From positions 1-64,000 of the IMG/VR virus record IMGVR_UViG_3300042923_000474: DNA of 64,000 bases; one strand, given 5' to 3'. The position numbers were made by a program, and so were the translations under genes. This document shows, one piece after another, positions 30,976 to 46,180 of this stretch. Each line of letters starts with the position of its first letter. Position 1 is the stretch's first letter. The notes under the pieces are model-generated. The model saw only the letters and a program-made list of their open reading frames with translations, did not search any database and was not told the origin of the DNA.

Positions 30976-32277
30976 ATGACTCGCAATCTCAAGCCCCATG
31001 CCGCGATGGTGCAGGAGGCTATTGCCCATCAGGGCCGTAGTCAGCTCTTCCGGGACATTTGCCTGATCTTTCGTGAGATCAAGGAACTGCCCTACAATGC
31101 CCTGACCAAGGACCTGCTCACAAAGAAGGGCTTGGATAAGGTCATCGAGAAGCACACGGGCCTCAACGTCCCTGTGAAGATCAGCCGTGAACCCTACATC
31201 AACGCCTGGGTTTATCCGCCGTACATCGATGCCAACCACGCGGTGTTCGCCGGTAACAAATACGAGCGCGACAATCCGTGGATTCTGGATTACATCAAGA
31301 AGCAGTCCGACAAGGCCTTCGGCAAGTCCGAGTCCATCTTCGGCACTGTTGACCGCGAGAAGTCTCGCGTCTCGGGTGACTTCACCAAGATCGAATGCCC
31401 GATGTTCATCACCGCGCTTTTGATCAACCGTCCAGATATCACGCCAGAAATGGCTACCTCGGTGATTCTGCACGAGCTGGGTCATGTCTTCACCTACTTC
31501 GAGTTCATGGGCCGCGTGACCACCTTCAACGGTGCTCTGCAGGCAGCCTCGGAAATGTTCTTCAAGTGCGACACCCGTGAAGACCGTCTGAAGATCATCC
31601 GCGATGTGGGTGACAAGTTCGGCGTGGACACGGACGATCGTGATGCATTGATGAATGCCCGTAACAAGGATTCGTTCATCACTGTTCTGGCTCGCGGCTA
31701 TGTCATTGACCGCAAGTCGAGCATGGGTTCTTCGATCTATGACATCACCCTCTGGGAATCGCTGTCTGACCAGTTCAGCATGCGCCATGGTTCCGGCGTG
31801 GACGGCGTCAAGATGATGGACATCCTGTACAAGAACAGCGGCGCCTCGGCGTACTCCAGCACCCTGGGCCACGTCATCTTCACCCTGTTCAAAGTGTTGA
31901 TGTTCATCATCTTCACCTTCTTCACCTTCGGCTTGCCGCTGTTGATCTTGTTCATCAACCCGGCAGAGAAGATTTATGACGAGCCTGAGGCTCGCATGAA
32001 GCGCATGCGCAACGACTTCGTGATGGGTCTCAAGTCCCCGAACATCTCTGATGAAGAGAAGAAGAAGATTGCGCAAGACGTCAAGGACATCGATGACATC
32101 ATCCGTGACCTCAATGACAAGCGCGGTCTGATCGAACTGTTCTACACCTCCTGCACACCAGAGGGTCGCCGTCAGTTCAGCCAAATGCGTTTCCAGCAAG
32201 ATGTTGAGCGCCTGATGGCCAACGACCTCTTGGTATCGTCTACCCGTCTGCAGAGTCTTGCTGACCGTCTTTCCTAA
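30976..32277 (+). CDS. Putative membrane-associated Zn metalloprotease-like virion protein
   Basis: ILHELGH (HExxH), downstream ESLSDQF (ExxAD-like) and a long hydrophobic stretch; AGGA SD. Confidence 0.65.
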   Translation: MTRNLKPHAAMVQEAIAHQGRSQLFRDICLIFREIKELPYNALTKDLLTKKGLDKVIEKHTGLNVPVKISREPYINAWVYPPYIDANHAVFAGNKYERDNPWILDYIKKQSDKAFGKSESIFGTVDREKSRVSGDFTKIECPMFITALLINRPDITPEMATSVILHELGHVFTYFEFMGRVTTFNGALQAASEMFFKCDTREDRLKIIRDVGDKFGVDTDDRDALMNARNKDSFITVLARGYVIDRKSSMGSSIYDITLWESLSDQFSMRHGSGVDGVKMMDILYKNSGASAYSSTLGHVIFTLFKVLMFIIFTFFTFGLPLLILFINPAEKIYDEPEARMKRMRNDFVMGLKSPNISDEEKKKIAQDVKDIDDIIRDLNDKRGLIELFYTSCTPEGRRQFSQMRFQQDVERLMANDLLVSSTRLQSLADRLS

Positions 32278-32288
32278 GGAGCCCTGAC

Positions 32289-32735
32289 ATGGCCGAACTC
32301 AAGATTACCCGCAAGAAGTCGGGCTCGATCATTTCCAACATCAACCAAATGCTGACCAGCACCAAAGTTGATGCCATGGACCGTACCCCGGTTACCGAAC
32401 TGGCTTTCGCTGAGCTGATCGCTGCCACCCTGCCGTTGGCCCCACAAGGTCAAGACGTGGCGGACTTCTACCGCACCAACTGCATCGAGGGCGTCAAGGC
32501 TTTCCTCGACCAGGCCGTAGAGCTGGTGTCCATCAGCCAAGAGCAGTGCCTGCTCGCGGTGTACGGTGTGTACGCTTACCGCGTGTCGATGATCCAGCCA
32601 GAGAACCTGACTGACGTGCGCCCATGCATTGGCCGCTACATCCGTCGCCTGCCGCAGCGTCATGCTGACATGGTCATGAAGTACCCGACCCTGAACGACA
32701 ACTACTGGGCTCTGGCCGACAGCATCTACGTGTGA
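32289..32735 (+). CDS. Hypothetical, probable virion protein
   Basis: AAGGAG SD; biased codons; lies in the head cluster. Confidence 0.75.
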   Translation: MAELKITRKKSGSIISNINQMLTSTKVDAMDRTPVTELAFAELIAATLPLAPQGQDVADFYRTNCIEGVKAFLDQAVELVSISQEQCLLAVYGVYAYRVSMIQPENLTDVRPCIGRYIRRLPQRHADMVMKYPTLNDNYWALADSIYV

Positions 32736-32745
32736 GGCGCTGACC

Positions 32746-34083
32746 ATGAAGATGATCACTGAAGACCTGACAGAGGAGTTGTTTACCGACGACCCTCTGA
32801 TTCCTCAGGGGATCATCTCCACTTATCAAGCGATCAAGAAAAATCGCATGGTGAGCCAAGAGATGGTCAGTCCGTACATCCAGAACTTCCCGATGAACAT
32901 CTCGCTGAGCAACTTCAGTGAGCTGCCTTCGGAGAAAGGGTTGGACATCGCGCTGGAAGGCTTTGCAGTGCTGTTTAAGGTGGCTGCCGGTGTATTGCTG
33001 GTGTCTGCCTTGGGTGTGTGCATCTTTAACTTCGTGCGCTCTCGTAAGGCAGCTGAGGCAACCACTGCCAATGCGTCTAGCGGTGCCATGCTGCATAGGG
33101 AGATTACCAAGCTGTTGACGGGTATCCGTGCAGCCGGTGGCTACCATGACCGCACGATCAAGATCAAGTCCAGCGACATCCCAACTGGGGTGACTCGCCG
33201 GGCGTTGAACCTGCATGGTGAGATCACCTACACGGATTGGGCCAATAGCTTCTATGCTTACGGCCACGATCAACACTTCGTGAATGCAATCGCCTCCAAG
33301 GTTGCCACCAACCAGTTCCCCAGCGTGACCGAACACCTGATGACACCGATGGCCGATTACCTGTCGGACTTGGGTGGTCGTGTGAAACAGCTTGCCCTCA
33401 TTATTCAGGACCTGCCTGCAGCTCTGAATGCTGGTCGTCTCCCGGAGATGGTCAGGAGTATTGAGAACCTCAATATTCAAGAGGTCCGTGCCACGTTCTT
33501 GGGTCACCTGGAACGCGTCTACGGCAAAGAGCTGTCAGCCCCACGCACCATCCTGCCTGCCAACAGTGCTCTGCTGTTGGACAGTCGTGTCACCTCCCTC
33601 AAAGAGTTCTACGACAACACCCGCGAAGACAAGCACTTCGTGCGTGACCACTACCAGAACAACCTGGACCGTTGGCGCAATGGCGACGTGGAAGGGATGT
33701 TGGGTCGAATCCCTGAGATCTGTACACAGGCTTCCAAGCTGGGTGCTGCTCCATCGCTCTCTACTGGCAAGAACATTGTCGATGAGTGTGAGAAGCTGCG
33801 TCAGAAGGTGTCTGCTCAGGAAGTCCCGGAAGTGGTTGAGGATGCTCTGAAAAAGATCCTTGAAGATATTCGTCTGGACTCGGTGGCCTCGGTCAACCTG
33901 TTTGAAATGGTGATCAACGAACAACGTCAGTTCACCATCTACATTCAGGACATCCTGAACCAGACCATCGAGTGGGGTGGTGCCGTAGCAGCCTTTACCA
34001 AGCCTGTTGATCCATCAGGTGCGAGGAAGCTGTTGCGTGACGTCCAGGAAGCTACCGCGTCGACGCGCAAGGTCAAACTTTAA
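32746..34083 (+). CDS. Probable head/ejection protein with propeptide, ALE site and hydrophobic helix
   Basis: IALE|GFAVLFKVAAGVLLVSALGVCIF. Confidence 0.7.
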   Translation: MKMITEDLTEELFTDDPLIPQGIISTYQAIKKNRMVSQEMVSPYIQNFPMNISLSNFSELPSEKGLDIALEGFAVLFKVAAGVLLVSALGVCIFNFVRSRKAAEATTANASSGAMLHREITKLLTGIRAAGGYHDRTIKIKSSDIPTGVTRRALNLHGEITYTDWANSFYAYGHDQHFVNAIASKVATNQFPSVTEHLMTPMADYLSDLGGRVKQLALIIQDLPAALNAGRLPEMVRSIENLNIQEVRATFLGHLERVYGKELSAPRTILPANSALLLDSRVTSLKEFYDNTREDKHFVRDHYQNNLDRWRNGDVEGMLGRIPEICTQASKLGAAPSLSTGKNIVDECEKLRQKVSAQEVPEVVEDALKKILEDIRLDSVASVNLFEMVINEQRQFTIYIQDILNQTIEWGGAVAAFTKPVDPSGARKLLRDVQEATASTRKVKL

Positions 34084-34091
34084 TGCCAACC

Positions 34092-34127
34092 ACCCCCTAC
34101 AGGGCAATCGCTCTTGTAGGGGGTTTC
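34092..34127 (+). terminator. Hairpin/terminator within the head-protein cluster
   Basis: ACCCCCTACAGGGC-AATC-GCTCTTGTAGGGGGT followed by TT. Confidence 0.6.
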
Positions 34128-34138
34128 AGGAGCTTTTT

Positions 34139-37100
34139 ATGAAGAAGTACGATTTGGCCGCACTGGCGCAGGCGCCGGGTAAGGATCTGGTCGAATTCAT
34201 CGGTCAGAACGACAAGGTCATTGCTGAGGTCACCACCCATGTGGCCAACCTTGAACGTCTGCGTGGCACCAGTCAGGCTCACGCCCTGGGCTACATGGAA
34301 TACATGCCCGATGAAGTAACCATGGGCGACTTCGATACCCACCTGTCGAAGAAAGGCCACCAGATGTCCATGGAGGCCTTGCACACCATCCTTCTGGTGG
34401 CAGCCTCTGCTGCCGTGGTAGCTGGCATTGGTTTCATTGCGTACAAGCTGTTCAAAGCAGCTCAGTCCAAAGAACCCAAGTCGGCGAACTACGTCGAGAA
34501 GGCCGAGCAAGTTCAGCGCATGGCTGAGAAGCTCAAAGAGTTCCGTATCAAGTTTGCCGAGTCTGCCCCGGCTACCCAAGAAGCCCTCAAGCAGCGCTTC
34601 TTGGCAGACAGCGTCAAGGAAGCCATCGTTGGTATGTCCGATGCTGAACTGCTGAACGATACGTTTGTGGCCTATGTTCGCAGCGAGATGCACCGCGAGC
34701 AGCCATCGTACTTGACTGCTGTGGCCCGTTACCGTGGTGAGCAGTCCCTGTTCCTCAATGCGGCCCTCATCTATCTGGACGGCGTCAAGGAATCGCTCGA
34801 AGCATTCCGTCGCGAGTTCCTCGATGTGGTGGCCAAAGCTCCAGACATCACCGACTACCAAATGGTCAACCTGGTCAACGGCCTCAAGTGGGACCGTATC
34901 GACAACGGTAACCATGCGGGCGTTCAGGCGGTGTTCGCTTGGGCTCAGGCGATGGGGACTCCGGTCACCAACCGTGTTGAAGAAACCCTCAAGGTGGCTC
35001 ACGACACATTGGTTGCACCGATCACCACTGAACAGGTGCGCGAGTACAACCCAGACATCGTTGCAGCGACCATCCCTAAAGGTGGCTACCACAAACTGTG
35101 GGCACTGCTCAAAGGCCTCAAGGACACTGGCAAGTACATTGAAGGTGCCAAGGGTGGTTTCACTCAGGGCGAGAAGCGTTCGCAGCAAGTCGCTGACCTG
35201 TACAAGGCTCAGATCGATCGTGCCAGTCAGTTGGCCGACAGCGTGGGCATCATCGAACAGATGGCTCGTGCTGAGAGCGATGCGATTGTTCGCAACATGA
35301 AGATCTCCACCAACGCCACCAAAGCCCTGCTTAACGCCATTGAAGAAGTGGCCGATAAGCTGGAAGACAAGGAACAGGCCAAAGAGATCAAGAACGCACT
35401 GGACGCGATCACTCGCGCTACTGCCTCTGGTCTGTCCATGAAGACTGAAGGTCTCCTGGATAACGGTCTGATGCCAATCAGCTTTGGCGCTGTCATGGCA
35501 TTGGAAGGCCGTAACCAGTGGGTTGAGTTCCTGAAGTCTGTTGCGGTTGTAGCTGCCATTGGTTTGGCGATCTATGCCCTGCAAGCGCTGGTTCTCTCCA
35601 TGCTGGGTCTGCAGTCGATGGCCGCTACCTTCTCCGGTGGTGTCGTCTACATGCAGAAGAACGGCAAGCGCATCACTCCGGGCGAAGCCGCTGACATCGT
35701 GGCAGAAGCTGCCAAGGACAAACGTCTGGGCAACTACGGCGTGTTCATGTTGGCCAAGAACCAAAGCCTGCCGTTCAAGTTGACTGAGCGCCATCTGGGC
35801 TCGGGCTTCCATGACGTGTCTCAAGGCGTGGTTGAATCGCTGCGTGGCTTTGCTGGCAAGCTGCATGGCAAGCCGAAGGATCAGGACGTTATCAATGCGT
35901 CCAAAGAAGGTTCGCGTTTGGTTAAGCGCACCATCGAGATCCTCAAAGGTCGTCTCAAGGACATGAGCTTCAACGTCCCGAACGGTGACCCGCACATCCC
36001 GGCTACTACCCACCAACTGCGTGATGCCATGGAAGCATTCATGGATCAGTGGTTCAACCCAGAAAAGGCCGACTACGGTCTGATCAAGCGCGGCATTGAT
36101 ACCACCTGGTTCGGTGTACTGGACGCCAAGGCCGAGCAGCATGTGGATCAGAATGCCAAGATCCTGACCGACGGCATCACCAGCTTCTCCAAATCCATCC
36201 CTGACGTCAAGAAGGAAGACCTCAAGGAAATGGGCGAAGAGGCTCAGGAAGCCCATGCCAACTTTACTCAGGAACTGGCCTACATGGCAGCACTGGGTCA
36301 TGTGGTGACCGAGGTGACCAAGAAGGCGATCCGTGACGGCGCAATGTCGATGCAGGCTGTTCGCAGTCAGCTGAAGATGCGCGGTGAAGGTATCGAGGGC
36401 CTGGACGAGGCCGACGAAGACATGGACGACTTCCAGCCTTACGAAGAACCACTCGATCCGTTGGTGGATATGGCTGAGGCCATGGGCGACCTGTACGTGG
36501 ACGAACAGTCTGACGTGGTGATGGCAACCGAGAACCGCAAGGTCATGATCACTCGTCTGTTGATGACTGCTGGCATCGTCATCATTCTGGGCGCTGGTGC
36601 CTACATGCTGCTCTCCATGTCGCAGAATCGCCGCAAGCCTAACTCGTTTGCAACCGACAAGATGTTCAAGGACATCAAGCGCGACCTGGATGCATCGCTC
36701 AAGTCGGAAGAGTTCTCGGCCCGCATGAAAGCGAGCACTGAGCGCTTTGCCGATGATCTGCAGGAAGACCTCAAGCGGTTCAAGGCTCGTATGGATGCGG
36801 CTCGTCAGCCAGCTGGTGGCAAACAGACTGAGAAGGAAGTCAATGGTCAGCGCGTAGACAGCGGCGCTGCTCAGTCGGCAGACGTGCGTCCTCGCATTGG
36901 TGAGACCGGATCTCCAGTCAGCGGCAGCAACAATGCTTCTTCGGTCACCCCGGAAGGCAACGTCAAGTCGATCTACGAGCTGGAAAACGCCGACCTGATG
37001 CAGATCGCCAAGGACGCAGACAAGCTGGTTGAAAACATCAGCAAGTTTGACTACAAAGGTCCTCTGCGTGAGCGTTTGATCGAACGTGTGCCGGGCATGC

Positions 37101-37879
37101 TGTCATTGAACATGGCATGTGGTTCCTTCGATCAGGTTACTCGCAACATCAGCACTGACCGCGAAAAGCGTATTCATGCGTTGAGCGAGCTGACCAAGCA
37201 CATCATGGACAACGTTGTTGATCCAGTGTTTGATGTGTTGAATGCCAAGGGCGATCACGAAGCGTTGGCTGAGAAGAACTACGACGGTGTAGTGTCTGCC
37301 ATTGCCAAGGCCATTGAGGACGCGACCAAAGAAGGCCTGCTGGACGAAATCCGCATGGATGAACACCAGAAGACCTTGGACGCCTTCAAGCGCCAAAGCA
37401 CTGAAGCTGAAGTGGACGATGCAATGAAGTCGTTCAACCCAAGCTGCATTCAGACAGCTGAGCGTGTGTACCTGGGTGAGGCGAAAGCGTATCACAACCT
37501 GACCCAAGAGCTAGACACCATGATGGTCGAGAACAAAGACTTCATGAATGTCGACTCCGGTGCACGCTTCAACGAACTGAAGGGCAACCGCGACATGGCC
37601 TCCAAACTCATCCGTCGTCTGGAAGAGTTCAAGCCAACCTTCAACATCATTGCCCGTGCTGTTCGGGCCCACGTCAACCTGAGCGATGTCATCTTTGAAG
37701 CCGCGGAGTTCACCTTGCGTGTTCACCGTAGCGTTCAGCGCGAGCTGATCAAGTCGGTTGAATTCCAGGCCATGAAAGCTGCTGAACTCAAAGCCCGTCT
37801 GGGTGGCGAATCGGCTACGCTGGATGAGCTGGAGAAAGCCATCGATGACCTGCGCAATGACTTTGGCAGTGGCAAGTAA
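34139..37879 (+). CDS. Large head/ejection protein with three repeated protease-site + hydrophobic-helix modules
   Basis: AGGAG SD before ATG 34139; SME, ALE and ATE sites each followed by a ~25-aa apolar helix. Confidence 0.75.
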   Translation: MKKYDLAALAQAPGKDLVEFIGQNDKVIAEVTTHVANLERLRGTSQAHALGYMEYMPDEVTMGDFDTHLSKKGHQMSMEALHTILLVAASAAVVAGIGFIAYKLFKAAQSKEPKSANYVEKAEQVQRMAEKLKEFRIKFAESAPATQEALKQRFLADSVKEAIVGMSDAELLNDTFVAYVRSEMHREQPSYLTAVARYRGEQSLFLNAALIYLDGVKESLEAFRREFLDVVAKAPDITDYQMVNLVNGLKWDRIDNGNHAGVQAVFAWAQAMGTPVTNRVEETLKVAHDTLVAPITTEQVREYNPDIVAATIPKGGYHKLWALLKGLKDTGKYIEGAKGGFTQGEKRSQQVADLYKAQIDRASQLADSVGIIEQMARAESDAIVRNMKISTNATKALLNAIEEVADKLEDKEQAKEIKNALDAITRATASGLSMKTEGLLDNGLMPISFGAVMALEGRNQWVEFLKSVAVVAAIGLAIYALQALVLSMLGLQSMAATFSGGVVYMQKNGKRITPGEAADIVAEAAKDKRLGNYGVFMLAKNQSLPFKLTERHLGSGFHDVSQGVVESLRGFAGKLHGKPKDQDVINASKEGSRLVKRTIEILKGRLKDMSFNVPNGDPHIPATTHQLRDAMEAFMDQWFNPEKADYGLIKRGIDTTWFGVLDAKAEQHVDQNAKILTDGITSFSKSIPDVKKEDLKEMGEEAQEAHANFTQELAYMAALGHVVTEVTKKAIRDGAMSMQAVRSQLKMRGEGIEGLDEADEDMDDFQPYEEPLDPLVDMAEAMGDLYVDEQSDVVMATENRKVMITRLLMTAGIVIILGAGAYMLLSMSQNRRKPNSFATDKMFKDIKRDLDASLKSEEFSARMKASTERFADDLQEDLKRFKARMDAARQPAGGKQTEKEVNGQRVDSGAAQSADVRPRIGETGSPVSGSNNASSVTPEGNVKSIYELENADLMQIAKDADKLVENISKFDYKGPLRERLIERVPGMLSLNMACGSFDQVTRNISTDREKRIHALSELTKHIMDNVVDPVFDVLNAKGDHEALAEKNYDGVVSAIAKAIEDATKEGLLDEIRMDEHQKTLDAFKRQSTEAEVDDAMKSFNPSCIQTAERVYLGEAKAYHNLTQELDTMMVENKDFMNVDSGARFNELKGNRDMASKLIRRLEEFKPTFNIIARAVRAHVNLSDVIFEAAEFTLRVHRSVQRELIKSVEFQAMKAAELKARLGGESATLDELEKAIDDLRNDFGSGK

Positions 37880-37891
37880 AGGAGAGCGTCT

Positions 37892-39238
37892 GTGAGCGAC
37901 TATTCCATGAAGATGGAAGAGCTGTTCGAGGACCTCACGGGAGAGGAGCCGACTCCTTTGGCCGAGCTGATGCAGCGCGAAGCCGAGGAGCAGCTCCCCA
38001 CCTATGGGGAAGACGAGGGCTCGGATCTGGATGATCAGATCCATGTGGCACAGGTTCGTGAGGATGAGTTGGTCAACATCATGGAGATGCTCCAGTCCAC
38101 TGGCGGTGTCTCCCGTGAAATGGCCAGCGGGTTCAAGGACGTCTTGCCGGAACACATGGCAATGGAATCCTTCACGTCCCAAGTGACCAAGACCAACCAC
38201 GTCATGTGTCTGGAGTTCGTGGGTACTGCGATTAAGTTGGCCGCTGCTGCTGGATTGGTAGCGGTCATCGGGGCCATTGGTTATGCGATCTATCGTATCA
38301 CCAAAACCCAAAAGCGCATGCCCAAGAACAAGTTGGATAAGGCTGTGTCTGCAGCGTTCTCCTCTGCCGAAGAGAAACTCAAGGTAGTGGTGGAAGGCCT
38401 CAAGCACGAGTACCCCAACATCGAGCACAAGGACCTCAACTGGAACAAGCAAGAGGCGTTGGTACAGGCGGCCATTCAAGCCCAGATTCAGGAGTTGGAC
38501 CTGCGCATGATGTCAGGCACCTACTCCTCTCTGATCGAGAAGGCTGCCCCCGATGCCTTGACTCAGGCCAACGAGGTCAAGACGTTCTTCGAAACCAGTA
38601 TCTTCAAAGAACTGGAGAAGATGACTCGTGGCGGTACCGGGAAAGATCTGGAAGCTGTGACCCAGAAGATCCAAGAGTTCAAGTTCGAGGACCGTGTGTC
38701 CAAACACTTGGATCGTTTCGGTCATGACATGCAGGTTAACTTCGAGCGTCCCGATCAGGTCTGTGAGAAGTTCCGTGCCAAGTACCAACGTGGTGTCAGT
38801 GCCGAGGAAGTTGCCAGTCAGCTGAAGAATGCCAAAGCTGGTGTGGCCAACATTCCAGAGCAATCGGCTACCACGATGTACAAAGCGCAGGATGTCATGA
38901 CGAGCCTGCTGTCTCGCATCAAAGCCTACGAAAAGAAGATGGACAAGACGAAAGAGCTTCCAGCTGATTACGTGGCCCAGATGAAAGGCGTGTTGCAAAA
39001 GTGCAAGGAGCCGATCAGTTCCCTAGGTGACATCTTCGCCATCTTGGAAATTGAGATCTCCTCGCAAACCCGCTGTGCCAAGATCAAAGGCATGGCAGTG
39101 GCCGATGGTTACAAGTCGGTCGCCAATCATTACAAAGAGAAAACCCTTACGGACAAGGAACACCGTAACGAGTACCGTGCTTGCGTCAAAGTGCTGGACA
39201 AGGCTTTTGACGACATTCGCGCTTCTCTGAAGTTGTGA
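37892..39238 (+). CDS. Probable head/ejection protein, paralog of 32746-34083
   Basis: AAGGAG SD with GTG start; acidic propeptide, then VMCLE|FVGTAIKLAAAAGLVAVIGAIGYAIY. Confidence 0.7.
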   Translation: MSDYSMKMEELFEDLTGEEPTPLAELMQREAEEQLPTYGEDEGSDLDDQIHVAQVREDELVNIMEMLQSTGGVSREMASGFKDVLPEHMAMESFTSQVTKTNHVMCLEFVGTAIKLAAAAGLVAVIGAIGYAIYRITKTQKRMPKNKLDKAVSAAFSSAEEKLKVVVEGLKHEYPNIEHKDLNWNKQEALVQAAIQAQIQELDLRMMSGTYSSLIEKAAPDALTQANEVKTFFETSIFKELEKMTRGGTGKDLEAVTQKIQEFKFEDRVSKHLDRFGHDMQVNFERPDQVCEKFRAKYQRGVSAEEVASQLKNAKAGVANIPEQSATTMYKAQDVMTSLLSRIKAYEKKMDKTKELPADYVAQMKGVLQKCKEPISSLGDIFAILEIEISSQTRCAKIKGMAVADGYKSVANHYKEKTLTDKEHRNEYRACVKVLDKAFDDIRASLKL

Positions 39239-39277
39239 CATACGCCCCCGGCCCGTTGCGGGCCGGGGGCTATGCCG
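39239..39277. terminator. Bidirectional terminator
   Basis: CATAC + GCCCCCGGCCCG-TTG-CGGGCCGGGGGC + TATGCCG. Confidence 0.85.
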
Positions 39278-42211
39278 TTACTCCATGCCTCGACCAGGCA
39301 GGTGTCTTACAAACGAGAAGTCCACGTCTTCCTCAACGGTGTAAGTACCGTCCGGCAGCGCAGTCAGCTTCTTGGCAATAGACATGCGTCCACTGTCGTC
39401 AGCCATCGTTACCAACGGATAGTTCTTGTCACCGCCCAGCCCTTGAATGCGGATCGCAATGATACTGCCGCCAGAGTTTTCCTTAGCCGCGTTACCAATG
39501 TCTTGCACCACAGTCGTAGCCAGGTTGAGACCTTCTGCCAGATAGCCAATGATAGCCACTCGCAGTTTCTCTTTGAGTTCCTCGTTCTTCCAATCGTTCT
39601 CGTTCATGTACACCGTCACCTTGAACGCCTGTTCGGCTTGCAGGGTAACCGATGCACCACCTTCCACAATCGCCTTGAGCATGCCAGTGGTGGCCATTGG
39701 CTTGAGGTAGAGTGTGGTCTTTTCCAACGCGCGCTTGTTGGTCTCCGTCATGTCAGAGCCGGCCCATTGCAACAGCTTATCGCAGATGGTGGTCATGTAG
39801 TTGATGGTGGACTGATCATTGGCGAAGTAGTAGCGCCCGTCGAACAGAGTCAAGTCAATCTGGCGAGCCAGCTGACGCCCTGTCTTCAGAACCTTATCAC
39901 CGTTGACATCACGGACGAAGTCACCTGCGTACTTGTCGTACTTAGGCGTGCCGTCTGGCATCAGAACAGGATCACCTGCCTTGTTGACAATCTCCGTCAC
40001 CAGTTTCCCATCCACCAACTCAATCTTGAGACTGCCGTCTGGATTGGTGGCCAACTCGTTCTCTTTGTAGAACGCCGGCACGTTGTAATCGTAGACCTCG
40101 TAGTCGGCTTCGGTGGTGACCGTACGGCTACCCGACCACAGATACTTCAACGGACTGCCCAACTTGACCCGCACACGTTCCTGCAAGATACCAATGGCAT
40201 CGTACGGCAACATGTTGCGGTTCTTGTCTTGATCGATCGTGGTTTCTTTCATGTCCAAGACTTTGTAGTCCGAGACGGTGTAGATGAGATTGAACTCCAC
40301 GGTCAAATCAATCTGATGCGGCAGAGGACCATCCCCGAACATGGAGAAGTTCTTGAGCGTCAGCGTATCGGCAGCATCAATGGCGTAGGTCGTTTCCAGC
40401 AGGAAGCCGTACACACGGTCCTTACCATCTTTGGCGATCAGCGTACCGTTGAGGTAAGCCATGCTGCTCTCACCTGGTGGCGTGTAAGCCAACTGCACCT
40501 GAACCTGAGTGTCATCCAGATCCTGATACAGTTCACCGCTCTGAGTCAGCACGTAGATCTGGTAACCCGCTTCCACACGCTCCACAATGATCGTCTTGGC
40601 CGTCTTCAGGTCAAGTTGCAGCGTAGGGTTCTCCAGCGTGTAACGACGCGAGAGGATCTCTGGGGCGTCCAGGTAGTAGCAGCGCACAGCAAAGCTTTCG
40701 TTAGCCGCATCCAGCACCCAATGGAAAGGGCTGAAACGGTAACCCGCTGAACTGATCTGTCTGGCCATGGCTTCTGGCTTGAGCTGACGCAGGTCATCGA
40801 TCTCACCTTGACGCACAAACGAGATAGCACCGTCTTGATGTTTGAACAACACCGAGGGATGCAGCGTCACAGAGTCACCGTTGTGGGTAACACCTGGAAT
40901 GCCATTAAGCTCTGCCATGCGCACCACGATGTTTTCTACGGCTGCCGAGATCGGAGTGACCGTATACTTGTCAAGTGGCGTAGCGAGCGCTCGGGTGGCG
41001 TTCAGGGTACGTTTTGTGATAGCGTCGACGTCCTTGACCGAGTTGTACTCAGAATCGCTCAGCACTTGGGCCAAGTTAACCTGGGTGATCGGCAGGTTGA
41101 TCGCACCGGTGTTGTGTTGCATCACACGGTCACGCAACTGTTCCAGCGTCAGCGCTTTACTGCCACCCGACGTGTAGCCATCGCAGTAAACCGAATACGT
41201 GGACACCTTCGCCCAGTTCGCGGTGTACTTGCCATTGTCCTCGTTGTCAAGGTCAATCCATTCCTCGGACCACTCGTTAGGCGTGTAGCCATCCCAACGG
41301 GTATCGTTCTCGGCACGGGTGGTATAAACGTCAAGCCGCAGTTCACCTGTGATCAAGCCGCTGGTCTGATAGACCAATGGGATACGGGCTTCCATCACGC
41401 CACTGTAAACCTTGACCAACACCGTCGGGACGTACGGGTCGAAGGTCTGATCCGTGTAACTCACACGAATCTCTTTCCAACCGAGCGTACCATCGTCATT
41501 ACGGACACGGCTGTAGGCACGGGTGTAGTGATAAAGGTTGCGGAACGTCATGCGAGTGTTCCACACCACCGCTTGGTTCAGCTGGTAGACCTCACTCATG
41601 ATCTCCATCTGACTGACGCTGGCTTTAACCATCAGCATCGGTGTACCGTCAGTGCTGGTATCCTGCACGGTTTCCAACAGGTTACCGTTGGACTCATGTA
41701 GCACGCCATTGACAGGGACGCCATAAACAACGCTCGGTTCACCCACTGGTGGGATACGGAACTCGATTGGGTATTCCAATGTGAAAGGAACACCGGCACA
41801 GGTGAACACCGAGTTCTTCGGCATCACCAACTTACGCATCCCACCGGGTGTTACTTCCACCGCGTAACGCAGAATCTCGTCACGGCTAACCAGAATGGTG
41901 AAAGGTGCGCTAGGCGGCTTGGAGAAGATGTTCAGGAAATCCCGGTCGGTCATGTGCAGATAAAGGTCTTCTGCAGTCAGGGCCAACCCAGGGAAACGCT
42001 TACGGTGCAGGACGTCAATGGCATTGAGCACATGAGCACCAGACGCCGCAGCCATTTCCCACAGCAACATAAAAGGAGTGGAGGGGTCAACCAAGCGGTA
42101 GTTACCCGCTAGGTTATCGTCCACCGCATCCAGAACACTGAGCGCTTTACCGGCAGGATCAAAGCGCGCGTCGTCCATGGCCTTCATCAGATCTTCGCTG
42201 GTCATGGTCAT
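39278..42211 (-). CDS. Large virion structural protein, probable baseplate wedge (phiKZ gp87-like)
   Basis: 977 aa, beta-rich; GGSKALTLEQLRDRV resembles a baseplate-J/gp6 segment; synteny. Confidence 0.6.
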   Translation of the reverse strand: MTMTSEDLMKAMDDARFDPAGKALSVLDAVDDNLAGNYRLVDPSTPFMLLWEMAAASGAHVLNAIDVLHRKRFPGLALTAEDLYLHMTDRDFLNIFSKPPSAPFTILVSRDEILRYAVEVTPGGMRKLVMPKNSVFTCAGVPFTLEYPIEFRIPPVGEPSVVYGVPVNGVLHESNGNLLETVQDTSTDGTPMLMVKASVSQMEIMSEVYQLNQAVVWNTRMTFRNLYHYTRAYSRVRNDDGTLGWKEIRVSYTDQTFDPYVPTVLVKVYSGVMEARIPLVYQTSGLITGELRLDVYTTRAENDTRWDGYTPNEWSEEWIDLDNEDNGKYTANWAKVSTYSVYCDGYTSGGSKALTLEQLRDRVMQHNTGAINLPITQVNLAQVLSDSEYNSVKDVDAITKRTLNATRALATPLDKYTVTPISAAVENIVVRMAELNGIPGVTHNGDSVTLHPSVLFKHQDGAISFVRQGEIDDLRQLKPEAMARQISSAGYRFSPFHWVLDAANESFAVRCYYLDAPEILSRRYTLENPTLQLDLKTAKTIIVERVEAGYQIYVLTQSGELYQDLDDTQVQVQLAYTPPGESSMAYLNGTLIAKDGKDRVYGFLLETTYAIDAADTLTLKNFSMFGDGPLPHQIDLTVEFNLIYTVSDYKVLDMKETTIDQDKNRNMLPYDAIGILQERVRVKLGSPLKYLWSGSRTVTTEADYEVYDYNVPAFYKENELATNPDGSLKIELVDGKLVTEIVNKAGDPVLMPDGTPKYDKYAGDFVRDVNGDKVLKTGRQLARQIDLTLFDGRYYFANDQSTINYMTTICDKLLQWAGSDMTETNKRALEKTTLYLKPMATTGMLKAIVEGGASVTLQAEQAFKVTVYMNENDWKNEELKEKLRVAIIGYLAEGLNLATTVVQDIGNAAKENSGGSIIAIRIQGLGGDKNYPLVTMADDSGRMSIAKKLTALPDGTYTVEEDVDFSFVRHLPGRGME

Positions 42212-43359
42212 ACGACAGCACCTGTTGTGTTAGGGGTGAGAGACTGAACGATCGCTTGGGCAGATTGGCTATCGAGCTTGCCACCGTAACCAATGGGCAT
42301 CAATGCACCTTTAGGTACACGAGTGTTCCACGCCACTTGTCGATCATTCATCCGTGCAGCATACACTTCCTTAGAAACCCAGCGTTCCAAGATTTGTTCC
42401 TCTGGGTCAATCCAGAAAAACGTGTCGTAAGTAAAGAGGTGGAAGGTGTCTTCATTCAACTGAACCATCGCCGTGTTCCGAAGAGCTGGGTGCATGTTCG
42501 GGTTAAAGTATGCGACGATGTTATTGAACTCTGTGAAGACGATCGGGTCGAAGGTATCGCACCCGTGACACTTCCAGTTCACGCCCACCTGTTGACCGTC
42601 CGTGTTGAACGGGTTGTCGATGGACATGTTGGCACCTGTAGCAGAAGGCGCAACGTACGGATAAGCAATTGTGGACCACCAGCTCGTAATACGCTTTTTG
42701 TTTGCGTCCAGAGCGAAGCGGTAGATCCGCGTGTGATAGTCGATACGGTGCTGCATGATCGAGTCCGGCAACGGTACCAAATCGCCCTCGTAAATGAGGG
42801 AGCCGTAGCACACCCACGCGAAAAGCAACATTACTATGACGTTACCCGACCCGTTACGCAGTGTCGTATTCAGATCCCACACCCTGAAGTTCTTGATCGT
42901 ATCGTCGATCATGCTCCAGGACTCATGGTGGTTACCCTCAACAGAGGAGAACGTACCCGGTGAGATCTCTGGCCAACCGGACTGAGACATCAGACCGTTG
43001 GACAGCCAAGGAATGAACGCTTGCTCATGGTTTGTCAGGGGGGAGCCTCTGCCGTTACGCCAAACGCCGACTGGGTCCAACATGGCCCGGACAGCACGAG
43101 GCAGGCTTATCCCGTCATTGCCCCCGATCATGCTAAAGAATGGTCGGAAGGCACGTAGGTTGCCGTCGGTAAAGTTCAGCCGCGGTCTGGTGAAGAAAGT
43201 CAGGCCAAACTGTTCCCGCACAGGCGGCATCGAGGGATGTGTCCCAAGGCTGTTGATGCCCCGCAATTGCTCGTAAATCGATGATACGGAACTACCCTTA
43301 CCACCGATTCGCGAGATGTAGTCAAAAATCTTTTCGTATTGTTCGCTGCTTAAACTCAT
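42208..43359 (-). CDS. Virion structural protein, probable baseplate/tube-initiator (phiKZ gp88-like)
   Basis: GGAGGG SD before ATG 43359 (MSLSSEQ...); coupled to 39278-42211; synteny. Confidence 0.55.
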   Translation of the reverse strand: MSLSSEQYEKIFDYISRIGGKGSSVSSIYEQLRGINSLGTHPSMPPVREQFGLTFFTRPRLNFTDGNLRAFRPFFSMIGGNDGISLPRAVRAMLDPVGVWRNGRGSPLTNHEQAFIPWLSNGLMSQSGWPEISPGTFSSVEGNHHESWSMIDDTIKNFRVWDLNTTLRNGSGNVIVMLLFAWVCYGSLIYEGDLVPLPDSIMQHRIDYHTRIYRFALDANKKRITSWWSTIAYPYVAPSATGANMSIDNPFNTDGQQVGVNWKCHGCDTFDPIVFTEFNNIVAYFNPNMHPALRNTAMVQLNEDTFHLFTYDTFFWIDPEEQILERWVSKEVYAARMNDRQVAWNTRVPKGALMPIGYGGKLDSQSAQAIVQSLTPNTTGAVV

Positions 43360-43391
43360 ATTCCCTCCAGACCGGTCAGGAGCACCCCCCA

Positions 43392-44690
43392 ATGAACATC
43401 AACATTCTGCCAGACCTCAGCCTGGCAGCAGCCCCGTTCACCACGGTTCTAGGCAATGCACTCAAGGTGGCTGCGACCACTAATAGCGACAGCATCATAC
43501 AGTATTCCGCTCCAGCCCGTGTGGAGCCGATCTGTCTGGTGGATGCTGCCTTGGCCCAGTATGAACATCTGTACCCAATCCTGCAGACGACCAACAGCAT
43601 CTTTGCTGCGTACTACATGCAGGCCGCTGCCTCGATGATCAACGTGTCGGCCATGCGTCTGCTCCGCGACATCGACCCGCTCAAGCCTGACCGCAACATG
43701 AACGCGGCTATCTTTGACTTCGTTGAACGTTCGGGCCAACAGGTCTACGGCGACAACAAGTCTCTGCCGTCGCGTGTCGAAGGCAAGGTACTGGAGATCG
43801 TGACTGAATCGATGTCCCTGCCTCGCCCTGGCGCTGCAGAGCCTCACATGACCTTCATGATCACTGAAGCTGCCGATGGCAAGCCTGTGTTCAAGGTAGC
43901 GTCCCCTGAAGAGGTCAAGCGCTACAAGGAAGCCTCCGCCAAGGCTGCCACCGATCTGGCCAAGAAGGAATACGAGAAGAATCTCGCTGACCTCAAGTCT
44001 GCCGGTAACATGGCCAAGTCCAGCGGCGTAGGCATGAGCAATGCCGTGATGGATACTCCGAACCTTGCAGTGGGCAAGATCTTCGAAGTCTCTGCTGACT
44101 ACGGTCAAGGCGTTGTGACCATTCAGGTTATCGTCGCCCTGAAGACCATGATCACCAGCTCGCAGAACCTGCAAGACATCTATGCCACCGGTGGTGAGCT
44201 GCGTAGCGCCAGTGAGCGCTGGCACGGCTGGCGTTCGGGCCAACTCCGTTTTGTCGAAGACATCATGTTCTGCTCCGACATCATCGAGAACCATCGCCGC
44301 ACTGCAATCCGCGACAACACTGGCGTCTACCTGCTCAACCGTGAGCGCGACACCAAGAACCGCGTGACTGCACTGCTGACTGGCAAGGCGTCTATCGGCA
44401 CTGCCTCGGGCATCGCCGTGTTCGACTCCGTCACTGCCAAGCGTCTGGAAGCTGCCGTGGGTGGCAAGCTCTCCGACTTCAACACCCGCGAGAAGATCTT
44501 CAAGCGTACCTACGCGATGAACATTATCGTGGTTGACCGCGAGTGGGAAGACGTCACTGTCTACAACCGCGGTATCCCGAAAGCGGTTGAAATGCCGATC
44601 GCCGAATACACCCGCTCCAAGAGCAAGGGTGGCTCCGACGTGGCTGACATCGTCAAACTGTTCCTGTCTGGCTCTGCCCCTACTCTCTGA
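43392..44690 (+). CDS. Head/inner-body protein (phiKZ gp89-like)
   Basis: AGGAG SD before ATG 43392 (MNINILPD...); synteny; strong codon bias. Confidence 0.65.
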   Translation: MNINILPDLSLAAAPFTTVLGNALKVAATTNSDSIIQYSAPARVEPICLVDAALAQYEHLYPILQTTNSIFAAYYMQAAASMINVSAMRLLRDIDPLKPDRNMNAAIFDFVERSGQQVYGDNKSLPSRVEGKVLEIVTESMSLPRPGAAEPHMTFMITEAADGKPVFKVASPEEVKRYKEASAKAATDLAKKEYEKNLADLKSAGNMAKSSGVGMSNAVMDTPNLAVGKIFEVSADYGQGVVTIQVIVALKTMITSSQNLQDIYATGGELRSASERWHGWRSGQLRFVEDIMFCSDIIENHRRTAIRDNTGVYLLNRERDTKNRVTALLTGKASIGTASGIAVFDSVTAKRLEAAVGGKLSDFNTREKIFKRTYAMNIIVVDREWEDVTVYNRGIPKAVEMPIAEYTRSKSKGGSDVADIVKLFLSGSAPTL

Positions 44691-44720: not shown

Positions 44721-45629
44721 ATGAAGATCACCGCATTCGTCGACAAGATCGTCGACGGTTTCAGTCGCAATGCTACGGTCAACGTACACGCGGCAGTTGT
44801 AAAAGAGATGAACGATACCACGATCCCGGTGTTGGAAACTTTCATCGAGTACGTGGAAAGCGATTCCCGTGCCAAGAAAGTCATCTCGGGTTTTGGCAAA
44901 GACTTCGTGACCCGCCTCGGTCGCGGTGGTAAGGGTGAGTTCTACGATCGCATCCTCGCTGCCATGAACGCCAACGTGGCACAAGCCGGTGACGTGGAAG
45001 ACCTGATCGCTAAGCTGATCCCGAAAGACGCGGACGCTCAGTCGCTTGATGGTCGTGCTGCCAACCTCGTGCAGTATGTCGAGATCATGGGCTTCACCAA
45101 CCGCTACCTGCGCCACCTGTTGCTGTCCTTCACCCAGGACATCACCAAGGCTATCAAAGGGCCCGACTTCAAACAAGGCCTGACCGACAGCCAACTCAAA
45201 GGCCTGCAGGCCAACATGAGTGCATTCGCTACCGCGATCTCCGTGTTGGAAACTGCTGCGTCTGGTGTGGACCGTGCGATCAAGAACATCCCTGAGTTCA
45301 ACGTCGCCCTGACCGACATCGACGCCATGACGGCTGCGAACGGTGCTGCGAAGATGGACCCATTGGGCACCAGCGGTTTCTTCTCTGCCGACTGGAACCC
45401 GATCCTGGCTGTTCGCATGTTGTACGAAGATCGCATCATCGCGAACTACCAAGGCGCCAAGGAAGACCGTCAGGCTCTGGAATATCGCATCCAGGCTTTG
45501 AAGGACTCCAAAGATGGCACCACCAACCCACGGTTGGAAGAAACCATCAACTACCACACCGGTCGCCTCAAAGAGGTGAACAAGAAGATCGAGAAGTACG
45601 AAGCCTCGGTCAAGGAGCCCTCCAAATGA
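44721..45629 (+). CDS. Head/inner-body protein (phiKZ gp90-like)
   Basis: AAGGA SD; very strong codon bias; synteny. Confidence 0.65.
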   Translation: MKITAFVDKIVDGFSRNATVNVHAAVVKEMNDTTIPVLETFIEYVESDSRAKKVISGFGKDFVTRLGRGGKGEFYDRILAAMNANVAQAGDVEDLIAKLIPKDADAQSLDGRAANLVQYVEIMGFTNRYLRHLLLSFTQDITKAIKGPDFKQGLTDSQLKGLQANMSAFATAISVLETAASGVDRAIKNIPEFNVALTDIDAMTAANGAAKMDPLGTSGFFSADWNPILAVRMLYEDRIIANYQGAKEDRQALEYRIQALKDSKDGTTNPRLEETINYHTGRLKEVNKKIEKYEASVKEPSK

Positions 45630-46180
45630 ATGACCGCGGGTTCGACGTCTACAGCAGCGGGTTTGCACGCCTGAACCCGCTCCAGGCCGGTACGGGCTAC
45701 AAAGAGCCTGATACTATGGCAGTTACTCACTATGATGGTATGGTTAAAGGCCAGCTTGCCGTCGTGGATGCAAAACACTTCGACAGCGTCATGCGTAATG
45801 CTTTGGCATTGCTCGGCACGGGGCCTGACTGGATTCAAATCCAGACCATGAATCCCAACCTCTCCCGCTACCAAGTAGACTTTATGGTTGACACTGTCAA
45901 TTATATAGCCACTGGGAAACGCCGCTATTATCTAGCGACGTGGCGTGAGTTGCACGCTGATGCGAACAACAACGGTTCGGTAAAGCCTATTGTTATGGGT
46001 GGCCGTATCGTGAACCCCGAAATCAAAGTGCCCCCTGAGCTACTCAAGGGACACCCCACGGAAATCATATCCCGCTGGATCTCCCGAGAGGGCGGTGTAG
46101 TGGATTTGATAGAGTCGCTGCACTTGATGTTCGGTGGAGACATCGAAGTCGGTGAGATCGGCTCGCTAGTAGCTAGCTAG
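45626..46180 (+). CDS. Hypothetical, probable virion protein
   Basis: ATGA coupling; AAGGAG SD. Confidence 0.7.
   Translation: MNDRGFDVYSSGFARLNPLQAGTGYKEPDTMAVTHYDGMVKGQLAVVDAKHFDSVMRNALALLGTGPDWIQIQTMNPNLSRYQVDFMVDTVNYIATGKRRYYLATWRELHADANNNGSVKPIVMGGRIVNPEIKVPPELLKGHPTEIISRWISREGGVVDLIESLHLMFGGDIEVGEIGSLVAS

What the first reader, a model, noticed from the sequence alone, without database searches (positions are those of the whole stretch)
34139..37879. Apparent viral polyprotein: three ejection-protein modules in one ORF
Seen: SME|ALHTILLVAASAAVVAGIGFIAYKLFK (34367), ALE|GRNQWVEFLKSVAVVAAIGLAIYALQALVL (35498) and, after an acidic spacer, ATE|NRKVMITRLLMTAGIVIILGAGAYMLL (36524). The modules are about 340-450 aa, similar to the free-standing neighbours. 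Established: the phiKZ prohead protease cuts after S/A/G-X-E. Inference: one precursor is cut in the head into three mature membrane-targeting proteins at fixed 1:1:1 stoichiometry, or it records a gene fusion.
Basis: partly seen in the sequence, partly recalled or inferred. Interest (0 to 1): 0.75.

Follow-up and report, generated by a model that had tools for sequence, protein, structure and literature searches.

The report
Triple gp86-fold head-protein precursor
A nucleus-forming jumbo phage encodes one 1,246-residue head protein made of three copies of a known capsid-interior fold, each starting with a membrane-like helix and separated by conserved protease-type cut sites, so it is probably cut into three proteins inside the head.

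Summary
ORF 34139-37879 (+) is one real gene of 1,246 aa (137.7 kDa). It has three strong hydrophobic helices, each just after an S/A-x-E motif. The window is the start of a 231.7-kb chimallivirus (phiKZ-like) genome that encodes a homologue of the phiKZ prohead protease.

New here: AlphaFold models of modules 1 and 3 each match solved phiKZ gp86 (Z 14.5 and 14.4, nearly full length). Module 2 matches module 1 by profile comparison. The gene and its two free-standing paralogues sit where phiKZ has single gp86.

Nineteen cluster representatives of 1,205-1,344 aa keep the three-module plan. Five [M/I]-x-x-E motifs (P1 = E79, E437, E456, E750, E798) are among the few conserved columns. They flank variable linkers that AlphaFold predicts as disordered.

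The polyprotein reading is therefore plausible but unproven. Site 2 reads D-L-Q in four relatives. Positions 437 and 750 have K/R at P3 here. Goslar's two-domain gp65 is deposited as one chain.

"Ejection" and "membrane-targeting" are not shown. The nearest solved relative lies on the inner capsid surface. SPN3US gp47, in the same slot, already has the single-module propeptide-cut-TM layout.

Verdict: a new variant of a known kind.

The parts
34139..37879 (+). Single gene for the 1,246-aa (137.7 kDa) precursor with three tandem gp86-fold modules
   Evidence: ORF and Shine-Dalgarno sequence. Full-length homologues at 55-98% identity. Nineteen three-module representatives.
34139..34375 (+). N-terminal propeptide, aa 1-79, ending in M-S-M-E79. 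Probably a capsid-targeting sequence.
   Evidence: It is the most conserved stretch and is shared with the single-module paralogues. The targeting role is by analogy with the SPN3US gp47 propeptide (PMC5694885).
34376..35449 (+). Module 1, aa 80-437: hydrophobic helix (aa 80-105, nt 34376-34453) followed by a helical bundle with the gp86 fold
   Evidence: Hydropathy. AF2 model. VIA-align to 8y6v_G gives Z 14.5 with 285/297 residues aligned. HHalign to the free-standing paralogues gives E 3e-16.
35438..35506 (+). Junction 1: M-K-T-E437, a 19-aa linker (aa 438-456), and M-A-L-E456
   Evidence: E437 is 19/19, M453 19/19 and E456 15/19 (Q in P0003-6). pLDDT is below 50 over aa 430-469.
35507..36388 (+). 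Module 2, aa 457-750: hydrophobic helix (aa 461-492, nt 35519-35614) followed by a helical bundle
   Evidence: Hydropathy. AF2 pLDDT about 70-89. HHalign against module 1 with the helix removed gives E 6e-6, against 0.26 for the reversed control.
36377..36532 (+). Junction 2: M-R-G-E750, a 48-aa acidic linker (aa 751-798, pI 4.05), and M-A-T-E798
   Evidence: M747 is 18/19, E750 18/19, M795 17/19 and E798 19/19. Linker length varies by tens of residues among relatives. pLDDT is below 50 over aa 750-798.
36533..37876 (+). Module 3, aa 799-1246: hydrophobic helix (aa 801-829, nt 36539-36625), a disordered insert, then a gp86-fold bundle with the conserved C-terminal motif LKGNRD..SKLIRR.EEFKP.F
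   Evidence: AF2 pLDDT 79. VIA-align to 8y6v_G gives Z 14.4 with 274/297 aligned; the next hit is Z 7.6. Conserved columns.
32746..34083 (+). Free-standing single-module paralogue (445 aa) with its own propeptide, then ALE71|hydrophobic helix
   Evidence: Orthologues in L009, L013 and L014.
37892..39238 (+). Free-standing single-module paralogue (448 aa): propeptide with MAME93|SF, then CLE|hydrophobic helix
   Evidence: Orthologues in L009 and L013.
32289..32735 (+). Positional counterpart of phiKZ gp85 (148 aa against 149 aa). In phiKZ, gp85 is the partner of gp86 in the vertex-binding complex.
   Evidence: Synteny only. No sequence match was obtained.
30976..32277 (+). phiKZ gp84 homologue (head protein) with a conserved hydrophobic segment at aa 294-330. 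Left border of the gene slot.
   Evidence: phrog_2767, E 4e-89. blastp to phiKZ gp84, E 3e-18.
39278..42211 (-). phiKZ gp87 homologue. Right border of the gene slot.
   Evidence: blastp gives 31% identity over 971 aa, E 4e-169.

Best explanation
The gene encodes a late head protein made of three tandem, diverged copies of the phiKZ gp86 fold. It arose by duplication and fusion within the 'gp86 slot' of a chimallivirus.

Proposed mechanism:
- The conserved 79-residue propeptide carries the whole 138-kDa precursor into the prohead.
- The gp175-type prohead protease then cuts after Glu at conserved [M/I]-x-x-E motifs: E79, E437 and/or E456, E750 and E798.
- This removes the propeptide and two linker peptides (19 aa and 48 aa, the second acidic).
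- It leaves three mature proteins of about 39, 32 and 50 kDa in equimolar amounts. Each begins with a strongly hydrophobic helix packed on a gp86-like helical bundle.
- Modules 2 and 3 have no propeptide of their own and ride in on module 1.
- In the virion they most likely sit with the capsid-interior (vertex-binding) protein set, as gp86 does. Whether they are then ejected and put their helices into the host or EPI-vesicle membrane is a further inference.

Status of each part:
- Shown: the ORF, the three helices, the fold of modules 1 and 3, synteny, the protease gene, and motif conservation in linkers predicted to be disordered.
- Inferred: cleavage, stoichiometry, virion location and membrane insertion.
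For: Context:
- The window carries chimallin, virion and non-virion RNA polymerase subunits and the major capsid protein.
- The gene order gp84-gp85-[slot]-gp87-gp88-gp89-gp90-gp91-gp92 matches phiKZ.

Fold:
- Module 1 (aa 84-436) aligns to 8y6v_G residues 120-421 with Z 14.5. Module 3 aligns to residues 124-413 with Z 14.4. The next hits are Z 5.3 and 7.6.
- 8y6v_G is gp86.
- Both alignments begin at the experimentally mapped gp86 maturation site, SQE-122 (PMC5694885, PMC11297242).
- Module 1 against module 2 without the helix gives HHalign E 6e-6; the reversed control gives 0.26.

Protease:
- A gp175 homologue lies at genome 136371-137138 (35% identity, E 7e-42).
- phiKZ MCP cleavage G-L-E163|N aligns with M-A-Q-E161|A here.
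- M-A-x-E occurs three times in the MCP propeptide and at residue 17 of the PF12699-like protein.
- The phiKZ motif was refined to L-S-x-E, so P4 is hydrophobic there too (PMC10449902).

Conservation:
- Of 42 columns that are at least 17/19 identical, seven are junction-motif residues: E79, E437, M453, M747, E750, M795 and E798.
- The linkers between them vary in length and sequence and have pLDDT below 50.

Precedents:
- SPN3US gp47, in the same slot, is cut at AVE-79 and probably ALE-111. Its mature part starts with a predicted TM helix, 'ALE|SWANAGKVGLVV', the same local pattern as module 3 in relatives (PMC5694885).
- phiKZ gp162 and gp93 are cut into several retained fragments with separate roles (PMC11297242).

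Other:
- The internal Met codons have no Shine-Dalgarno sequence.
Against: - No proteomic data exist for this uncultured phage.
- E456 is Q, with D at P3, in P0003-P0006, and P3 is E in P0002.
- P3 at 437 and 750 is K/R in this phage, outside the S/A/G rule, although it is A in more distant members.
- P3 is V or I at site 3 in six of the 19 representatives.
- Goslar gp65, a two-domain gp86 homologue with an internal A-L-E/T-M-E motif before a hydrophobic helix, is deposited as one chain spanning residues 134-934. Multi-module members therefore need not be cut.
- The fold of module 2 was not modelled on its own.
- Profile comparisons of modules 1 or 2 against module 3, and of any module against gp86, are not significant. 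Those links rest on predicted structure alone.
Confidence: 0.6

Rival explanations
1. Only the N-terminal propeptide is removed. The rest stays as one three-domain polypeptide of about 129 kDa that occupies several positions in a capsid-interior complex. The hydrophobic helices serve as protein-protein contacts. The M-x-x-E motifs are conserved for binding or folding reasons.
For: Goslar gp65 has two folded domains in the vertex-binding complex, and a PDB entity covers residues 134-934 as one chain. Site 2 has no Glu in four relatives. P3 is K/R at 437 and 750. phiKZ gp86 is capsid-bound (PMC11297242).
Against: Motifs of the same type as the MCP maturation site are conserved at both ends of two linkers that are otherwise variable and predicted to be disordered. 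Each module starts where mature gp86 starts. A deposited entity sequence does not prove an unbroken chain.
Confidence: 0.25
2. The three products are true ejection proteins. After cleavage they leave the head with the DNA, insert their N-terminal helices into the host inner membrane or EPI vesicle, and act together there.
For: Hydropathy peaks of 2.25-2.45, with basic residues after helices 1 and 3. SPN3US gp47 is essential: mutant virions assemble but are not infective, and it has the same cut-then-TM layout (PMC5694885). The vertex-complex protein gp184 of phiKZ is injected (PMC10449902). Weak similarity of module 3 to ClyA-type pore formers, Z 5-7.
Against: Ejection was not tested. The gp86 fold is seen bound under capsid vertices (PMC11297242). 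The first helix of phiKZ gp86 is only amphipathic (maximum KD 1.04). Z values of 5-7 are within the noise for helical bundles (tool note).
Confidence: 0.3
3. The long ORF is an artefact (misassembly or read-through of three genes), or modules 2 and 3 are made from internal start codons.
For: Each junction motif contains a Met codon. The neighbours are separate genes of module size.
Against: Nineteen 50%-identity cluster representatives from independent samples are 1,205-1,344 aa with the same plan. There are no stops, and no Shine-Dalgarno sequence before M434, M453, M747 or M795. The Met is replaced by I, L or V in some members.
Confidence: 0.03

Closest known systems
phiKZ gp86 (PDB 8Y6V chain G), minor capsid protein of the vertex-binding complex
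   Same: Same genomic slot between gp85 and gp87. Same fold for modules 1 and 3 (Z 14.5 and 14.4 over about 95% of the solved chain). The mature protein starts right after an S-x-E protease site (SQE-122).
   Different: gp86 is a single module of 422 aa. Its first helix is amphipathic, not TM-like. No sequence or profile similarity is detectable.
Salmonella phage SPN3US gp47 (essential head 'ejection protein' candidate; PMC5694885)
   Same: Same slot. It has a long propeptide cut by the prohead protease (AVE-79 seen, ALE-111 inferred), and the mature part begins with a predicted TM helix. The local pattern 'ALE|SW...K.G' equals that at module 3 in relatives.
   Different: gp47 has one module (577 aa). 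No profile similarity is detectable. It is not a tandem fusion.
E. coli phage Goslar gp65 (934 aa; vertex-binding complex; bioRxiv 10.64898/2026.04.21.720040)
   Same: It is a gp86 homologue enlarged by a second folded domain. That domain is preceded by A-L-E/T-M-E and a hydrophobic helix (KD 1.68). It shows that multi-module members exist in a cultured phage.
   Different: It has two domains, not three. It is treated as one chain in the deposited model. The helix is less hydrophobic. No similarity was found by profile.
phiKZ gp162 and gp93 (PF12699 inner-body proteins)
   Same: One precursor is cut by gp175 at several S/A/G-x-E sites into fragments that are kept and do different jobs (PMC11297242).
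   Different: The fold is different. The fragments are unlike each other rather than repeats, and there are no TM-like helices.
T4 internal proteins with capsid-targeting sequences, cut by gp21
   Same: An N-terminal targeting peptide brings cargo into the prohead and is removed after Glu.
   Different: The T4 targeting sequences are 10-20 residues, with one cargo per precursor. The proteins are unrelated.

Membership tests
gp86 / gp47 / gp65 family of chimallivirus head proteins | Gene lies between the gp85 and gp87 homologues in the head-gene cluster | tested here: met
gp86 / gp47 / gp65 family of chimallivirus head proteins | Elongated helical-bundle fold of solved gp86 | tested here: met
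   Module 1 Z 14.5 and module 3 Z 14.4 to 8y6v_G, each well above the next hit. Module 2 is linked only through HHalign to module 1, E 6e-6.
gp86 / gp47 / gp65 family of chimallivirus head proteins | Detectable sequence or profile similarity to gp86 homologues | tested here: not met
   blastp and HHalign are not significant against a six-member gp86 alignment, Goslar gp65 or SPN3US gp47. Known members are also mutually undetectable (PMC5694885).
gp86 / gp47 / gp65 family of chimallivirus head proteins | Present in the virion head | not testable with these tools
   Uncultured phage; no proteome.
Substrates of the gp175 / T4 gp21-type prohead protease | The genome encodes the protease | tested here: met
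   35% identity to phiKZ gp175, E 7e-42.
Substrates of the gp175 / T4 gp21-type prohead protease | S/A/G-x-E motif at the proposed sites | tested here: inconclusive
   Met at 79, 456 and 798 in this phage. At 437 (K-T-E) and 750 (R-G-E) P3 is basic here but Ala in distant members. Site 456 is D-L-Q in four relatives.
Substrates of the gp175 / T4 gp21-type prohead protease | Sites lie in accessible, unstructured segments | tested here: met
   pLDDT is below 50 over aa 430-469 and 750-798. This is a prediction only.
Substrates of the gp175 / T4 gp21-type prohead protease | Cleavage observed (semi-tryptic termini or a mass shift) | not testable with these tools
   Needs virion mass spectrometry.
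Viral polyprotein (one ORF, several mature proteins) | Modules occur as free-standing genes in the same or related genomes | tested here: met
   Module 1 matches the single-module paralogues (E 3e-16). The second module of the two-module protein P0020 matches the 37892-type free-standing gene (E 1.8e-5). No free-standing orthologue of module 2 or module 3 was found.
Membrane-inserting phage ejection proteins | Transmembrane-grade hydrophobic helix | tested here: met
   Kyte-Doolittle 19-residue maxima of 2.25-2.45. No dedicated TM predictor was available.
Membrane-inserting phage ejection proteins | Leaves the capsid and enters the host membrane | not testable with these tools
   Inferred only, from SPN3US gp47 genetics (PMC5694885).
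ClyA-type alpha pore-forming toxins | Fold match clearly above the helical-bundle background | tested here: not met
   Z 4.8-7.1 to ClyA, AhlB, SmhB and MakA/B, below the tool's caution level for helical proteins.

The most novel reading that the evidence does not exclude
The protease releases three different gp86-fold proteins in strict 1:1:1 ratio. They are ejected with the DNA and assemble through their N-terminal helices into a hetero-oligomeric membrane device in the early-infection (EPI) vesicle, for example a conduit for DNA entry, NTP uptake or mRNA exit. The capsid vertex complex of chimalliviruses would then double as a store of membrane-active infection proteins.
Probability: 0.15. 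Interest if true: 0.85.

Novelty: new variant of a known kind. Interest (0 to 1): 0.5.

Why it matters
How chimalliviruses build and operate the lipid EPI vesicle is an open question. No phage-encoded membrane protein was named in the EPI-vesicle papers I searched.

This locus shows that the fast-evolving gp86/gp47 slot can expand to five modules in three genes, with a sixth module elsewhere in the genome. Every module starts, after a protease-type site, with a TM-grade helix.

The locus also links two known proteins by fold and position. One is the capsid-bound gp86 of phiKZ. The other is the 'ejection protein' gp47 of SPN3US. Their kinship had only been guessed from gene order.

If the cuts are real, this is a clear phage case of a polyprotein used to co-package equimolar paralogues with a single targeting peptide.

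Tried and rejected
- DNA and protein searches of 50,697 cultured phage records with the whole protein and with the distant member P0015 found nothing. The three-module family was found only in metagenome-derived collections.
- Pfam and PHROGs gave no hit for the protein or its paralogues.
- Foldseek alone gave no significant PDB or BFVD match; gp86 ranked 50th by E-value. It became clear only on re-alignment.
- The ESM Atlas look-up of module 2 was uninformative.
- HHalign scores that included the helices were inflated. I repeated them with the helices removed and with reversed controls. Only module 1-module 2 and module 1-single-module matches survived.
- I considered and rejected internal translation starts.
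- I rejected the + strand ORFs 39272-40750 and 40808-41701 as genes. They shadow the gp87 homologue on the - strand.
- I rejected a ClyA-type toxin relationship as below threshold.
Full report
**What the window is.** The 64-kb window is the start of a 231,724-bp virus record with direct terminal repeats. PHROG matches identify chimallin (727-2763), several subunits of the phage multisubunit RNA polymerases, a DnaB-like helicase, a PF12699-type internal head protein (46217-47473) and the major capsid protein (56473-58794). This is a nucleus-forming jumbo phage of the phiKZ kind. No cultured phage record matches the gene at DNA or protein level.

**The observation.** ORF 34139-37879 (+) starts at an ATG with CAGGAG seven bases upstream and encodes 1,246 aa, 137.7 kDa.
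- Hydropathy gives three strong segments, aa 80-105, 461-492 and 801-829, with 19-residue maxima of 2.25-2.45.
- Each segment is directly preceded by S-M-E79, A-L-E456 or A-T-E798.
- The neighbours 32746-34083 and 37892-39238 have one such unit each, behind their own N-terminal extension.
- Within this one sequence the coincidence is modest (P about 0.01 by random placement). Conservation makes it robust, as described below.

**Genomic position.** blastp against phiKZ proteins fixes the following equivalences:

| Window ORF | phiKZ counterpart |
|---|---|
| 30976-32277 | gp84 |
| 39278-42211 (-) | gp87 (31% identity over 971 aa) |
| 42208-43392 (-) | gp88 |
| 43281-44690 | gp89 |
| 44721-45629 | gp90 |
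| 45626-46180 | gp91 |
| 46217-47473 | gp92/93 |

- The 148-aa ORF 32289-32735 sits where gp85 does.
- The three genes 32746-39238 therefore fill the place of the single phiKZ gene gp86.
- The + strand ORFs 39272-40750 and 40808-41701 are shadows of the gp87 homologue.
- Other chimalliviruses have one or two helix-less gp86-like genes in this slot (L007, L008, L010, L011).
- Goslar has two genes of about 930 aa. SPN3US has gp47.

**The family.**
- A word-indexed search found six full-length homologues of 1,235-1,246 aa.
- A profile search of 1.84 billion representatives found 18 proteins: 14 of 1,205-1,344 aa, one of 886 aa and three of 425-455 aa.
- Every long member has exactly three strong hydrophobic segments.
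- Contigs for a distant three-module member (L013) and for the two-module member (L014) show the same neighbourhood. L014 also carries gp87, gp88, PF25618 (PhiKZ_gp91) and PF12699 genes.
- The own genome holds a further single-module paralogue at 157053-158372 (-), with 'ATE|ALSTAVKV...'.

**Fold.**
- AlphaFold2 on aa 80-798 with 19 sequences gave two helical domains (pLDDT mostly 70-89). Low-confidence stretches fall at full-length aa 430-469 and 750-798.
- Module 3 gave pLDDT 79.
- Foldseek alone was not significant. Re-alignment put phiKZ capsid chain 8y6v_G first for both models, well clear of the rest.
- Module 1 (aa 84-436) aligns to chain residues 120-421 with Z 14.5 and 285 of 297 residues aligned. 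The next hit is Z 5.3.
- Module 3 aligns to residues 124-413 with Z 14.4 and 274 of 297 aligned. The next hit is Z 7.6.
- That chain is gp86. [quoted passage not shown]
- Both alignments start at the position of the mapped gp86 maturation site, SQE-122 (PMC5694885).
- Profile comparison with the helices removed links module 1 to module 2 (E 6e-6; reversed control 0.26) and module 1 to the free-standing paralogues (E 9e-8). It does not link module 3 or gp86 to any of them.
- So modules 1 and 3 share a fold by prediction, and module 2 joins through module 1.

**Are the junctions protease sites?**
- The genome encodes a gp175 homologue.
- The phiKZ capsid-protein cut G-L-E163|N aligns with M-A-Q-E161|A here.
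- M-A-x-E occurs three times in the first 161 residues of the capsid protein and at residue 17 of the PF12699-like protein. The genome-wide rate of M-[SAG]-x-E is 0.56 per 1,000 aa.
- phiKZ proteomics refined the motif to L-S-x-E, so a hydrophobic P4 is expected (PMC10449902).
- In the 19-sequence alignment only 42 columns are at least 17/19 identical. Seven of them are E79, E437, M453, M747, E750, M795 and E798.
- There are thus five conserved [M/I]-x-x-E motifs, not three. They bracket a 19-aa linker and a 48-aa acidic linker whose length and sequence vary widely.
- This is the pattern expected for excised spacers.
- The predicted products are M1 aa 80-437 (39.4 kDa), M2 aa 457-750 (32.2 kDa) and M3 aa 799-1246 (50.0 kDa).
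- The internal Met codons have no ribosome-binding site.

**Cautions.**
- E456 is Q, with D at P3, in P0003-P0006, and P3 is E in P0002. In those phages the cut, if any, would have to be at E437.
- P3 at 437 and 750 is K or R here, though Ala in distant members.
- Goslar gp65 is described as a gp86 homologue with a second folded domain in the vertex complex (10.64898/2026.04.21.720040). That domain follows A-L-E567/T-M-E571 and a hydrophobic helix. One PDB entity covers residues 134-934 as a single chain.
- A deposited entity does not prove an unbroken chain, but it shows that fusion need not imply cleavage.

**Function.**
- SPN3US gp47 is the closest studied case. It lies in the same slot and is essential.
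- Its propeptide is cut at AVE-79 and probably ALE-111. Its mature part opens with a predicted TM helix.
- Mutant virions look normal but are dead, so the authors infer an ejected, membrane-interacting protein (PMC5694885).
- Its sequence 'ALE|SWANAGKVGLVV' repeats the local pattern at module 3 of relatives ('MAME|SWSNGAK', 'MALE|SWGRFAR').
- Against a purely ejected role, gp86 is seen fixed under the vertices. However, another vertex-complex protein, gp184, is injected (PMC10449902).
- I found no report of a phage-encoded membrane protein of the EPI vesicle.
- Weak matches of module 3 to ClyA-type pore formers (Z 5-7) are within the noise for helical bundles.

**Fusion history.**
- Module 1 is homologous over its full length to the single-module genes (E 3e-16).
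- The 886-aa protein P0020 is a module-1-like unit followed by a unit that best matches the 37892-type free-standing gene (E 1.8e-5). That second unit lacks a propeptide.
- Free-standing members always carry the conserved propeptide, and internal modules never do.
- This fits a model in which one targeting peptide loads several modules.

**Verdict.**
- The 'three homologous modules in one ORF' reading is well supported.
- Proteolytic resolution into three proteins is the best-supported mechanism but is unproven (about 0.6).
- Ejection and membrane targeting remain inference.
- The object is a new, conserved, metagenome-only variant of the known gp86/gp47 head-protein family.

Noticed in passing
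window 39272-40750 and 40808-41701 (+): These long + strand ORFs are shadow ORFs. The real gene is 39278-42211 on the - strand, a phiKZ gp87 homologue (31% identity, E 4e-169).
   Followed up: yes
own genome G000:C1:157053-158372 (-), outside the window: A further single-module paralogue (439 aa). Its propeptide carries MSIE, MANE and IAME|SF, followed by VATE|ALSTAVKVAIGVAIVAAF. It is closest to P0023 (27% identity, full length).
   Followed up: partly
window 30976-32277 (+), aa 294-330: The gp84 homologue carries a very hydrophobic segment (KD 2.59). The same segment is present in phiKZ gp84, Goslar gp67 and the gp84 homologues of L007, L008, L009 and L011. This is a conserved head protein with a TM-like segment of unexplained role.
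   Followed up: partly
window 34092-34122 (+), between 32746-34083 and 34139: A 9-bp GC-rich inverted repeat (CCCCCTACA ... TGTAGGGGG) with a 13-nt loop lies just upstream of the Shine-Dalgarno sequence of the long gene. The terminator scan did not call it because the loop is too long.
   Followed up: no
window 56473-58794 (+), aa 1-161: The capsid-protein propeptide holds three M-A-x-E motifs (MAVE45, MASE144, MAQE161). The last aligns with the phiKZ Glu163|Asn164 cut. This suggests that the protease site in this clade is M-A-x-E.
   Followed up: partly
window 46217-47473 (+), aa 1-136: The PF12699-like internal head protein has nine S/A/G-x-E motifs in its acidic first 136 residues, starting with G-M-A-L-E17|N. 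This is reminiscent of the phiKZ gp93 cut at Glu13|Ser14.
   Followed up: no
P0003-P0006 (relatives), alignment A1 columns about 452-457: One subclade has D-L-Q instead of A-L-E at site 2 while keeping M-K-T-E 19 residues upstream. This is a natural test of whether the site-2 cut is dispensable.
   Followed up: partly
relatives P0014-P0019, acidic linker between modules 2 and 3: The linker is otherwise variable, yet it carries a clade-conserved motif LPEY.QAGYRFDPREG. The window's clade has Y..(E/D)..DP(L/M)(V/I)D instead. The spacer may itself have a function, for example a second targeting or scaffold contact.
   Followed up: no
L007:12509-14937 (-): This chimallivirus has two tandem gp86-like genes (411 and 396 aa, 35% identical) without hydrophobic helices. 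It is an independent duplication in the same slot.
   Followed up: partly
PDB 36za chain C7, compared with L012:29884-32688 (Goslar gp65): A chain identical to Goslar gp65 residues 134-934, present in 55 copies, is labelled 'Inner-peripheral baseplate spoke gp32'. Entry 11fg calls the same protein 'PVC Protein gp65'. The first label looks inconsistent with a vertex-complex copy number.
   Followed up: no
L012:27032-29824 (-) (Goslar gp64, 930 aa): A second protein of about 930 aa sits in Goslar's gp86 slot, with a hydrophobic segment near its C-terminus (aa about 890, KD 1.93). The Goslar structure paper does not mention it, and its relation to gp86 is untested.
   Followed up: no
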